From: Macrostomum lignano
Lineage: Eukaryota
Assembly (NCBI GenBank): GCA_002269645.1
Contig: NIVC01005244.1
Coordinates: 1-18,494 of the forward strand
Direction of reading: 5' to 3'
DNA: 18,494 nt
This document shows positions 1,046 to 1,114 of the stretch, one piece after another; the first letter of the stretch is position 1, and every line of letters starts with the position of its first letter. Position numbers and translations under genes: made by a program. The notes beneath the pieces were generated by a model. The model did no database searches. It was given only the letters and a program-made list of their open reading frames with translations, and was not told the DNA's origin.

Positions 1046-1114
1046 GACATCTTGGTGGGGCCGACCAGGGCCGACCATCCGGGTCGCCACGGAGAGGCGA
1101 TGTCCTTGACCCCG
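1046..1114 (-). ncRNA. Candidate HDV-like self-cleaving ribozyme
   Basis: Hand-folded on the minus strand: P1 GGGUC/GACCC (1112-1108 with 1085-1081), J1/2 AAG, P2 GACAUC/GAUGUC (1104-1099 with 1051-1046), P3 GCC/GGC, L3 UCUCCGU, P1.1 UC/GA, 7-bp P4 with a UC bulge, J4/2 CCAA. Confidence 0.65.

What the first reader, a model, noticed from the sequence alone, without database searches (positions are those of the whole stretch)
1046..1114. Candidate HDV-like self-cleaving ribozyme at the 5' end of a retrotransposon fragment
Seen: on the minus strand every element of the nested double pseudoknot is present in the right order (P1, 3-nt J1/2, 6-bp P2, P3 GCC/GGC, 7-nt L3, P1.1 UC/GA, P4, J4/2 CCAA with a candidate catalytic C). 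P1 has 5 perfect pairs. Adding one C to the GACCC run (plus strand 1081-1083) would give a perfect 7-bp CGGGGUC/GACCCCG P1, and this window shows many 1-nt losses. Established: L1Tc/ingi, R2 and some RTE elements carry 5' HDV-like ribozymes. Inference: this is an Ingi-type ribozyme, possibly not yet described in this lineage, with its cut site at about 1114 marking the element's 5' end.
Basis: partly seen in the sequence, partly recalled or inferred. Interest (0 to 1): 0.85.

Follow-up and report, generated by a model that had tools for sequence, protein, structure and literature searches.

The report
HDV-like ribozyme at retrotransposon start
The 69 bases are very probably a slightly damaged copy of a self-cutting RNA of the hepatitis-delta type that trims the front end of a jumping gene in an invertebrate genome; this is a known trick, here in a group of elements where I found no published description.

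Summary
On the minus strand, 1114-1046 carries P1, J1/2, a perfect 6-bp P2, P3 GCC/GGC, a 7-nt L3 (UCUCCGU), P4 and J4/2 CCAA in HDV order.

Topology alone is not rare: shuffles give 0.5-1.6 such matches per window. No Rfam HDV model reaches threshold (best RF02682, 17 bits against 44).

Context and relatives give the support. The site lies 28 nt after the (GAA)6 tail of a broken RNase H-bearing non-LTR copy. It lies just before an ORF with a 2A peptide (GDIEQNPGP).

A metagenomic non-LTR element with a homologous 2A N-terminus (L005) has a clean HDV-like fold at the same place and in the same 69-nt register. 29 of 30 pair cells hold, with 7 compensatory pairs. A third element (L007) keeps P1, P2 and P4, but a 30-nt stretch replaces its 7-nt L3. 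Homology between L005 and L007 starts exactly at the predicted cut site.

With the L005 template, only 1114-1046 matches in the window (chance 0.002).

This copy has a G·G clash at the cleavage-site pair. One extra C would repair it. The "Ingi-type" label is not established.

Verdict: new member of a known kind; activity untested.

The parts
1046..1114 (-). Candidate HDV-like self-cleaving ribozyme, 69 nt. The predicted cut is between 1114 and 1113 by homology with L005/L007, or between 1113 and 1112 in the 5-bp P1 register.
   Evidence: Sequence. Own descriptor. Gapless structural match to L005 with 29/30 cells paired and 7 compensatory pairs. Only template match in the window, chance 0.002. 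Rfam RF02682 17.0 bits, below the gathering score of 44.
1108..1114 (-). P1 5' strand, CGGGGUC. G1113 is the predicted +1 nucleotide.
   Evidence: Pairs with 1085-1079 (GACCCGG). 1112-1108 form 5 perfect pairs. G1113 faces G1080, the only unpaired cell. C1114-G1079 is possible.
1099..1104 (-). P2 5' strand, GACAUC, preceded by J1/2 AAG (1107-1105).
   Evidence: Six Watson-Crick pairs with 1051-1046. Three of them are compensatory relative to L005.
1086..1098 (-). P3 (GCC 1098-1096 with GGC 1088-1086) closing L3 UCUCCGU (1095-1089).
   Evidence: L3 has the conserved U at position 1 and C and G at positions 5 and 6 of the published descriptor (PMC6326823). The same U, C, G and U are found in L005.
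1079..1085 (-). P1 3' strand, GACCC(GG). In the 5-bp register G1080 and G1079 form P1.1 with U1093 and C1094. The C-run 1083-1081 is where one C may be missing.
   Evidence: Inference for the register.
1056..1077 (-). P4 hairpin, 7 pairs with a 2-nt bulge and a 6-nt loop.
   Evidence: Energy -8.4 kcal/mol on its own. L005 and L007 have 5-bp P4 hairpins of other sequence at the same place.
1052..1055 (-). J4/2, CCAA. C1055 is the candidate general-acid cytosine.
   Evidence: Fits C-N-R-A directly 3' of P4. L005 and L007 have CAAAU. Trypanosomatid ribozymes have C(C/U)AA.
1046..1051 (-). P2 3' strand, GAUGUC. It contains ATG 1050-1048.
   Evidence: That ATG opens a 27-codon frame ending at 969-967, one base out of register with the 2A frame.
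806..1078 (-). Leader ORF of the ribozyme-bearing element. It has an in-frame ATG at 1078-1076 (inside the ribozyme), the 2A motif GDIEQNPGP at 892-866, then C-x2-C (LNCDSCGSV...). The element breaks off near 805.
   Evidence: BLASTP to the N-terminus of L005 gives 51% identity over 39 aa, E 4e-8. DIEQNPGP is the canonical L1Tc 2A motif.
1115..1142 (-). 28-nt spacer between the upstream tail and the ribozyme. It is presumably flank DNA.
   Evidence: Unique in the window. It has no counterpart in L005 or L007, whose flanks are unrelated.
1143..1161 (-). (GAA)6G microsatellite tail of the upstream non-LTR copy.
   Evidence: Relatives end in (CAA)n (L019) or an AGA/GAA run (L021).
1202..2009 (-). 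5'-truncated non-LTR copy, upstream in transcript sense. It carries an RNase H domain and a C-terminal CCHC region, read in three frames, so there are at least 2 frameshifts.
   Evidence: Pfam RNase_H, E 9e-9. tblastn with P0001 in frames -1, -3 and -2. P0001 is 35% identical, E 4e-30, with the same ...LLRRLGRL end.
1..805 (+). Fragment of a different, A+T-richer non-LTR element on the other strand (endonuclease domain). It abuts the truncated end of the ribozyme-bearing fragment.
   Evidence: Weak Pfam Exo_endo_phos_2 hit at 284-547. The motif SDHLPI is read by my own translation of the plus strand of the sequence. GC content drops here.

Best explanation
Window 1114-1046 (minus strand) is a copy of an HDV-like self-cleaving ribozyme. 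It forms the first ~69 nt of an endonuclease-type non-LTR retrotransposon whose ORF begins with a 2A 'StopGo' peptide.

Inferred mechanism, by analogy with R2, RTE and L1Tc. The element is transcribed by read-through from upstream DNA, here the tail of another copy. The nascent RNA folds into the nested double pseudoknot. The cytosine in J4/2 (C1055) acts as general acid, and the chain is cut just 5' of the first G of P1, between 1114 and 1113. The element RNA is left with a 5'-OH and the folded ribozyme at its end. That end is then what reverse transcription copies, so the DNA 5' boundary of full-length copies coincides with the cut site.

The ribozyme may also help cap-independent initiation at the ATG that lies in or just after its 3' strand. 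The 2A peptide would then release the arbitrary leader peptide from the functional protein.

This particular copy is a fragment that ends near 805. Its cleavage-site pair is broken (G1113 opposite G1080). It is therefore either a decayed relic with reduced or no activity, or it is intact in the organism and one C of the run 1083-1081 was lost in sequencing.
For: Shown directly: all helices and junctions are present in HDV order, with L3 U...CG and J4/2 CNAA.

Context: the site is on the same strand as, and 28 nt after, the (GAA)6 tail of an RNase H-bearing non-LTR copy. It lies 154 nt before a GDIEQNPGP 2A motif.

Relatives:
- L005 was found through the 2A N-terminus and encodes 2A, endonuclease and reverse transcriptase.
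- At 182-249, 24 nt before its ATG, L005 has a perfect 6-bp P1 and 6-bp P2, P3, L3 UACACGU, a 2-bp P1.1, a 5-bp P4 and J4/2 CAAAU.
- The gapless 69-nt alignment with the window has 41% identity but 96.7% paired cells and 7 compensatory pairs. Slid controls give 25-47% paired and 0-1 compensatory pairs.
- In 81 kb of L001-L017, only L005 181-249 fits the window-derived template (15/15 pairs, 4/4 core). Shuffles give 0.075 matches.
- Conversely, only 1114-1046 fits in the window, with chance 0.002.
- L007 keeps P1, J1/2 AGA, P2, P4 and J4/2 CAAAU, with further compensatory changes.
- Homology between L005 and L007 begins exactly at the first G of P1, after unrelated flanks.

Local chance of the fold in the 170-nt 5' region is 0.0008-0.0026. 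One added C makes the HDV fold the minimum-energy structure. Known biology of 5' HDV-like ribozymes in non-LTR elements comes from PMC6765202 and PMC7761336.
Against: - No cleavage data exist.
- No Rfam HDV-type model reaches its threshold. RF02682 scores 17.0 against 44, and the opposite strand of the same bases scores 17.2 with an unrelated family.
- Rfam also misses the clean L005 fold, so this mainly shows that those models are narrow.
- Models built from trypanosomatid ribozymes or from L005 alone give only noise-level local hits here.
- Topology alone is expected 0.5-1.6 times per window.
- The pair at the cleavage site is G.G. P1.1 is weak or depends on the register.
- The nested minimum-energy fold is no better than shuffles (z = +0.84). 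It uses a competing helix, 1113-1108 with 1062-1057.
- Only two to three family members could be compared, and L005 was found with a fold-based scan, so its pairing is partly by selection.
- L007 has 30 nt where L3 should be. L004 lacks the fold.
- No second copy from the same genome was available, so the 5' end at 1114 is inferred from relatives only.
Confidence: 0.7

Rival explanations
1. Chance fold: a G+C-rich 5' leader that happens to satisfy a permissive HDV descriptor and has no RNA function.
For: The descriptor is expected 0.5-1.6 times per window. The Rfam score is weak and is matched by a spurious antisense hit. P1 is imperfect. The minimum-energy fold is not better than shuffles. 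Covariance models from relatives do not find the site.
Against: It is the only template match in the window, with chance 0.002. It sits in the one 170-nt stretch where such a ribozyme is expected, with local chance at most 0.003. The same fold occurs in the same 69-nt register, with 7 compensatory pairs, in an independently found homologous element.
Confidence: 0.1
2. A conserved structured 5' RNA that does not cleave. It could be, for example, an internal promoter, a ribosome entry element or a protein-binding site that merely shares the pseudoknot topology.
For: The conservation and covariation shown here prove structure, not catalysis. In L1Tc the same 77 nt also act as a promoter (abstracts of PMC3383444 and PMC4748587). 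L007 keeps the outer helices but lacks a normal L3.
Against: The bases kept between the window and L005 are those of the catalytic core: L3 U, C and G, and the J4/2 C followed by AA. The homology between L005 and L007 starts exactly at the predicted cut site. Cleavage explains that; a mere binding site does not.
Confidence: 0.1
3. A true homologue of the trypanosomatid Pr77/L1Tc ribozyme, inherited with the 2A leader from a common Ingi-clade ancestor.
For: It has the same 2A motif DIEQNPGP as most L1Tc copies. The core is similar: (G/A)CC-UCNNCGU-GG(C/U) and C(C/U)AA. RNase H is present in the adjacent copy, which resembles the element in composition.
Against: The covariance model built from 14 trypanosomatid sequences gives only 5.6 bits, E=4. 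That same core is also shared with a bacterial HDV-like ribozyme, so it marks the class and not the lineage. The trypanosomatid ribozymes start with C, whereas L005 and L007 start with G. The host is a metazoan. The fragment has no reverse transcriptase domain to place it in a clade. A Cys-rich domain directly after the 2A is reported for the Crack, CR1 and Rex1-type elements.
Confidence: 0.15
4. The structure belongs to the upstream copy and processes or marks its 3' end.
For: It follows the (GAA)6 tail by only 28 nt on the same strand.
Against: In L005 and L007 the same structure has unrelated, A+T-rich DNA upstream and no element copy there. It is followed by the homologous 2A ORF. The relative in L019 ends at its (CAA)n tail with host DNA directly after it.
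Confidence: 0.03

Closest known systems
L1TcRz / Pr77 ribozymes of trypanosomatid L1Tc-ingi elements (PMC3185411, PMC4035085)
   Same: An HDV-like fold occupies the first 70-80 nt of an endonuclease-type non-LTR element. The element's ORF starts with a 2A peptide carrying the same DIEQNPGP motif. P3-L3 (R)CC-UCNNCGU-GG(Y) and J4/2 C(C/U)AA are alike. P1.1 is weak. Copies occur head to tail.
   Different: A covariance model of 14 trypanosomatid sequences does not detect the window site. P1 there is the conserved CCCUGNN, starting with C. P4 is longer there. The host here is an invertebrate animal. Promoter activity is unknown here.
HDV-like ribozymes of R2, RTE and baggins non-LTR elements (reviewed in PMC6765202 and PMC7761336)
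   Same: They have the same position at the very 5' end. They have the same proposed role: release from a read-through transcript and help with translation initiation.
   Different: They belong to other element clades, and no 2A leader is reported for them. No sequences were compared here beyond the Rfam models, none of which matched at threshold.
Rfam RF02682, HDV-like ribozyme of Faecalibacterium prausnitzii
   Same: It is the best library match, end to end over 1114-1043. It has the same CCUCU-CGUGG core and the same AAGAUGU after J4/2.
   Different: The score is 17.0 bits against a gathering score of 44. It is a bacterial family. The site is not a member.
Undescribed 5' structures of metagenomic 2A-encoding non-LTR elements: L005 (Ga0302320_10129005) and L007 (Ga0137398_10267423)
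   Same: These are the nearest real relatives. L005 has the same 69-nt register, and both share J1/2 of three purines, P2 starting GAC, P3 GC(C/U) and J4/2 CNAA. Their 2A N-termini are homologous to the window's.
   Different: Overall identity is 41%. L005 has an intact G-C cleavage-site pair and a 2-bp P1.1. L007 has 30 nt in place of L3. Their ATG lies about 20 nt after the ribozyme rather than in its last helix.

Membership tests
HDV-like self-cleaving ribozymes (nested double pseudoknot) | Helices in the order P1, P2, P3, L3, P3', P1', P1.1, P4, J4/2, P2'. | tested here: met
   Sequence. Own descriptor hit at 1114(-). Energies of the helices.
HDV-like self-cleaving ribozymes (nested double pseudoknot) | L3 has a conserved U at position 1 and C and G at positions 5 and 6 (descriptor in PMC6326823). 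| tested here: met
   L3 = UCUCCGU, 1095-1089.
HDV-like self-cleaving ribozymes (nested double pseudoknot) | J4/2 begins with the catalytic C, followed by N-R-A, directly 3' of P4. | tested here: met
   CCAA at 1055-1052. Published descriptors give CNRA or CRRA. The second base is a pyrimidine here, as in the trypanosomatid ribozymes.
HDV-like self-cleaving ribozymes (nested double pseudoknot) | G at +1 is paired with a pyrimidine at the base of a 6-7 bp P1. | tested here: inconclusive
   In the register shared with L005 and L007, G1113 faces G1080 and is not paired. A 5-bp register gives G1112-C1081. One extra C restores the pair.
HDV-like self-cleaving ribozymes (nested double pseudoknot) | A two-pair P1.1 forms between L3 positions 2-3 and the two bases after P1. 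| tested here: inconclusive
G1080.U1093 and G1079-C1094 form only in the 5-bp or added-C register. The 7/7 register gives one A-U pair.
HDV-like self-cleaving ribozymes (nested double pseudoknot) | Compensatory base changes occur in relatives. | tested here: met
   Seven compensatory pairs against L005, with further ones in L007, including in P4. Only three sequences were available.
HDV-like self-cleaving ribozymes (nested double pseudoknot) | The score reaches the curated threshold of a library model. | tested here: not met
   RF02682 scores 17.0 bits against 44. No other HDV-type family matches at E of 10 or less. The clean L005 fold is missed as well.
HDV-like self-cleaving ribozymes (nested double pseudoknot) | Site-specific self-cleavage that depends on the J4/2 cytosine. 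| not testable with these tools
   This needs an in vitro transcription and cleavage assay.
Trypanosomatid Pr77 / L1TcRz | Match to the Pr77 hallmark in sequence and structure. | tested here: not met
   Model R1, built from 14 published sequences, gives only a local hit at 1086-1105(-), 5.6 bits, E=4.
Trypanosomatid Pr77 / L1TcRz | The element resides in a trypanosomatid genome. | tested here: not met
   The window encodes an innexin and a Tc1/mariner transposase, so the host is an invertebrate metazoan.
Trypanosomatid Pr77 / L1TcRz | The element ORF begins with a 2A peptide of the DIEQNPGP type. | tested here: met
   GDIEQNPGP at 892-866. The motif is named as the canonical L1Tc one in PMC3708506.
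Ingi clade of non-LTR retrotransposons | Placement by reverse-transcriptase phylogeny, with the domain order endonuclease, RT, RNase H. | not testable with these tools
   The ribozyme-bearing fragment ends near 805, before any enzyme domain. RNase H is seen only in the separate upstream copy. No reference set of clades was at hand.

The most novel reading that the evidence does not exclude
The HDV-like ribozyme and the 2A leader form one ancient 5' module shared by kinetoplastid L1Tc/ingi and a wide set of animal endonuclease-type LINEs. In this module the ribozyme sets the RNA 5' end and helps initiation. The 2A peptide exists to discard the arbitrary peptide that the structured RNA forces onto the start of the ORF. 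The module would be inherited or exchanged as a unit.
Probability: 0.2. Interest if true: 0.6.

Novelty: new member of a known kind. Interest (0 to 1): 0.4.

Why it matters
Self-cleaving HDV-like ribozymes are the known way by which promoter-less LINEs free their RNA from host transcripts. Finding one in front of 2A-encoding animal elements extends the list of lineages that use it. It links two unusual expression devices, a ribozyme 5' end and a StopGo leader, that were so far seen together only in trypanosome L1Tc.

Practically, the motif marks the true 5' end of full-length copies. That helps transposon annotation in invertebrate genomes. The L005 sequence is a compact 68-nt candidate for bench tests.

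The case also shows that the Rfam HDV-type models miss clean members of the class.

Tried and rejected
- Rfam at gathering threshold on the window gave only a weak tRNA-like hit.
- Protein searches with the 2A N-terminus alone and with the single-frame RNase H ORF found nothing.
- Exact look-ups of window ORFs found nothing, so the source assembly is not in the collections.
- A covariance model from trypanosomatid Pr77 ribozymes gave no significant hit. A single-sequence model from L005 also gave none. Both reward primary sequence too strongly.
- The pattern GCCTCTCCGTGGC...CCAAGATGTC gave one chance hit in prokaryotic genomes, in a Rhodosalinus coding region without P1. It gave none in viral contigs.
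- A protein-based scan of viral contigs found nothing.
- The relatives of the RNase H copy (L019-L022) are all 5'-truncated. They carry no 2A, so they could not show a 5' end.
- Fifteen of the 17 2A-bearing metagenomic loci show no HDV-like fold upstream of the ORF.
- MAFFT could not align L007 with the other two because of its 30-nt insert, so its pairs were counted by hand in a script.
- Nested folding energy gave no signal, which is expected for a pseudoknot.

Full report
WHAT IS THERE

On the minus strand, 1114->1046 reads CGGGGUC AAG GACAUC GCC UCUCCGU GGC GACCCGG A UGGUCGGCCCUGGUCGGCCCCA CCAA GAUGUC.
- P1 has five contiguous pairs (1112-1108 with 1081-1085) and a possible C1114-G1079 pair beyond a G1113.G1080 clash.
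- J1/2 is three purines.
- P2 is a perfect 6-bp helix (1104-1099 with 1046-1051).
- P3 is GCC/GGC and L3 is 7 nt.
- P4 has seven pairs with a 2-nt bulge.
- J4/2 is CCAA.

L3 has the U at position 1 and the C and G at positions 5 and 6 that a published descriptor fixes. J4/2 fits C-N-R-A (PMC6326823). Adding one C to the run 1083-1081 makes P1+P3+P4 the minimum-energy fold, at -26.8 kcal/mol.

SURROUNDINGS

The window comes from an invertebrate animal. It encodes an innexin (17469-17891 +), a glutamate dehydrogenase (8578-9458 -), a GDPD/sphingomyelinase-D-like gene (about 2400-3560 +) and a Tc1/mariner transposase.

On the minus strand, upstream of the candidate, lies a 5'-truncated non-LTR copy:
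- It has an RNase H domain (Pfam E 9e-9) and a CCHC region.
- Its stop codon is at 1204-1202, followed by a short 3' UTR and a (GAA)6 tail at 1161-1143.
- tblastn with its best relative reads it in frames -1, -3 and -2, so it carries at least two frameshifts.

After a 28-nt spacer comes the candidate. After the candidate comes an ORF with a 2A StopGo motif, GDIEQNPGP (892-866), followed by LNCDSCGS.... The G+C-rich fragment stops near 805, where it abuts the endonuclease part of another non-LTR element on the plus strand.

Two start codons are possible. ATG 1078-1076 lies inside the ribozyme and is in frame with the 2A. ATG 1050-1048 lies in the last helix and is one base out of frame, stopping at 969-967.

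By my own arithmetic on the coordinates, all three frame changes in this stretch go the same way, each as one lost base would. Two are in the upstream copy and one is between ATG 1050 and the 2A frame. Sequencing error and decay both remain open.

IS IT MORE THAN CHANCE?

By topology alone it is not. My descriptor requires:
- P1 of 7 bp with at most 1 mismatch;
- P2 of at least 5 bp;
- P3 of 3 bp and L3 of 7-8 nt;
- at least one P1.1 pair;
- P4 of at least 3 bp;
- J4/2 of the form CNRA.

It finds six sites in the window, and only this one when P2 must be at least 6 bp. Block-wise dinucleotide shuffles give 1.58 and 0.51 sites per window. Within the 170-nt sense stretch between the tail and the 2A coding part, the chance is 0.0026 and 0.0008.

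Rfam has no match at threshold. In a sensitive scan the F. prausnitzii HDV-like model aligns end to end to 1114-1043 at 17.0 bits, against a gathering score of 44. The opposite strand gets 17.2 bits from an unrelated family, so that score is noise-level by itself.

The nested minimum-energy fold is not better than shuffles (z = +0.84). It uses a competing helix, 1113-1108 with 1062-1057. The HDV-type nested part costs -20.1 kcal/mol against -24.3 for that fold, before P2 is counted.

TEST OF THE 'INGI-TYPE' LABEL

The canonical L1Tc 2A motif is DIEQNPGP, the same as here (PMC3708506). Published trypanosomatid Pr77 ribozymes have a very similar core, (A/G)CC-UCNNCGU-GG(U/C) and GC(C/U)AAG (PMC4035085 supplement).

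A covariance model built only from 14 of those sequences finds just a local P3-L3 match at 1086-1105, at 5.6 bits and E=4. The core is also shared with the bacterial model, so it marks the class and not the lineage. The fragment has no reverse transcriptase domain, so the clade cannot be set.

RELATIVES

Searches with the 2A N-terminus or the single-frame RNase H ORF in the protein collection found nothing. The source assembly is not on record.

Joining the three frames of the upstream copy gave relatives: P0001 at 35% identity, E 4e-30, and P0002 and P0003. Their contigs (L019-L022) hold 5'-truncated copies with microsatellite tails and no 2A. They say nothing about the 5' end.

A scan of metagenome contigs with the 2A N-terminus gave 17 loci. 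All are non-LTR elements with ...SGDIEQNPGP followed by a Cys-rich region.

One of them, L005, encodes 2A, endonuclease and reverse transcriptase. It is 51% identical to the window's N-terminus over 39 residues, E 4e-8. At 182-249, 24 nt before its ATG, it carries a textbook fold: GGUUCG AGA GACGCG GCC UACACGU GGU CGAACC GU UCGCC(11-nt loop)GGCGA CAAAU CGCGUC.

MAFFT aligns it to the window site without a single gap. On that alignment:
- 29 of 30 pair cells in P1, P2 and P3 are standard pairs.
- 7 pairs differ on both sides, 4 in P1 and 3 in P2.
- With partners slid by 1-3 columns, only 25-47% pair and 0-1 are compensatory.
- The single unpaired cell is the window's G1113.G1080, where L005 has G-C.

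Because L005 was found with a fold-based scan, I tested both directions with a fixed-column template of 15 pairs plus 4 L3 bases.
- In the 81 kb of L001-L017, only L005 181-249 reaches 14 or more pairs. It has 15/15 pairs and 4/4 core bases. Shuffles give 0.075 sites with 15/15.
- In the window, only 1114-1046 does, with 14/15 pairs and 4/4 core bases. This occurred in 0.2% of 1000 shuffles.

A model built from both sequences then picked up L007. L007 has P1 GGUUCC/GGAACC, J1/2 AGA, P2 GACGUG/CACGUC, P4 UGGAG/CUCCA and J4/2 CAAAU. These carry further compensatory changes relative to L005, but 30 nt stand where the 7-nt L3 should be.

L005 and L007 are alike from the first G of P1 onward and unrelated before it. 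That is what self-cleavage at that point predicts for the DNA 5' end of such elements.

L004 and the other loci lack the fold. Rfam does not detect the L005 fold either, so the library models are narrow.

READING

The site is best explained as a member of a family of HDV-like 5' ribozymes of 2A-encoding, endonuclease-type non-LTR elements.

Structure, context and covariation with two relatives are shown. Cleavage, its position (between 1114 and 1113 by homology) and any role in translation are inferred from what is established for R2, RTE and L1Tc (PMC6765202; PMC7761336).

The copy in the window is imperfect in two ways. The pair at the cleavage site is broken, and the element is only a 310-bp fragment. 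Restoring one C in the run 1083-1081 gives GGGGUC/GACCCC. It also puts G1080 and G1079 opposite U1093 and C1094, the canonical P1.1 positions. That fits better than a substitution at 1080. Whether the C is missing in the organism or only in the assembly cannot be told here.

COMPARISON AND NOVELTY

HDV-like ribozymes at the 5' ends of non-LTR elements are well known. The pairing of such a ribozyme with a 2A leader is known from L1Tc. I found no paper describing it for animal 2A-encoding elements, but the library is incomplete. I rate the finding as a new member of a known kind, of moderate interest.

CAVEATS

- Only three sequences support the family, and one of them has an aberrant L3.
- No second copy from the same genome was available.
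- Two of my significance figures depend on descriptors and templates of my own making.
- It is not proven that the upstream RNase H copy and the 2A fragment belong to one family.

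Noticed in passing
window 967-2039 (minus strand): All three frame changes in this stretch go in the direction of one lost base. Two are inside the RNase H copy (codon phase 2 to 0 to 1). One is between ATG 1050 and the 2A frame (phase 0 to 1). This could mean homopolymer-type sequencing errors rather than decay.
   Followed up: partly
window 12419-12487 (+): Rfam's tRNA model scores 32.2 bits here (threshold 29), but ARAGORN finds no tRNA anywhere in the window. It may be a tRNA-derived repeat or a pseudogene.
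   Followed up: partly
window 2444-2584 and 3166-3306: A 141-nt direct repeat, 100% identical and 722 nt apart, lies inside the GDPD/sphingomyelinase-D-like gene region. It could be a recent duplication or an assembly artefact.
   Followed up: no
window 3861-4781: A Tc1/mariner-type element: a DDE_3 transposase ORF (3971-4576 +) is flanked by inverted repeats of 63 nt (97% complementary) and 54 nt (100%), at 3861-3990 and 4651-4781.
   Followed up: no
window 5934-6013 and 6683-6762: An 80-nt inverted repeat, 99% complementary, with 669 nt between the arms. It looks like a small foldback or MITE-like element.
   Followed up: no
window 7000-8260, 10680-12190, 13210-13480, 15640-16350, 16840-17390: Long tandem arrays with periods of 15, 20, 24, 30 and 48 nt, plus (AACT)n and (CTGT)n runs, fill much of the window.
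   Followed up: no
L021 and L022, plus-strand coordinates about 7020-7122, read on the minus strand: A further HDV-like motif: AGUCUU/GGGACU, AACUCU/GGAGUU, ACC-UUCACGC-GGU and J4/2 CAGAU. It lies about 220 nt upstream of a minus-strand reverse-transcriptase fragment. No Rfam hit at threshold.
   Followed up: partly
L022 about 1030-1145 (minus strand); also present in L021: A G+C-rich block inside a satellite array carries GCC-UCCUCGCU-GGC followed by GG, and a CCAA before a strand complementary to the P2 position. P1 is poor, with a mismatch and two G.U pairs. It is probably chance.
   Followed up: partly
L019 7228-8373: The closest relative of the RNase H copy is a 1.1-kb 5'-truncated insertion with a (CAA)n tail. 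It sits in one unit of a host tandem repeat of about 1.8 kb, so the empty site can be read in the next unit (about 8987-9030).
   Followed up: partly
window 12992-13111 (minus strand): My stricter first descriptor, which missed the candidate, hit this site instead. It shows how easily G+C-rich sequence satisfies the topology.
   Followed up: no
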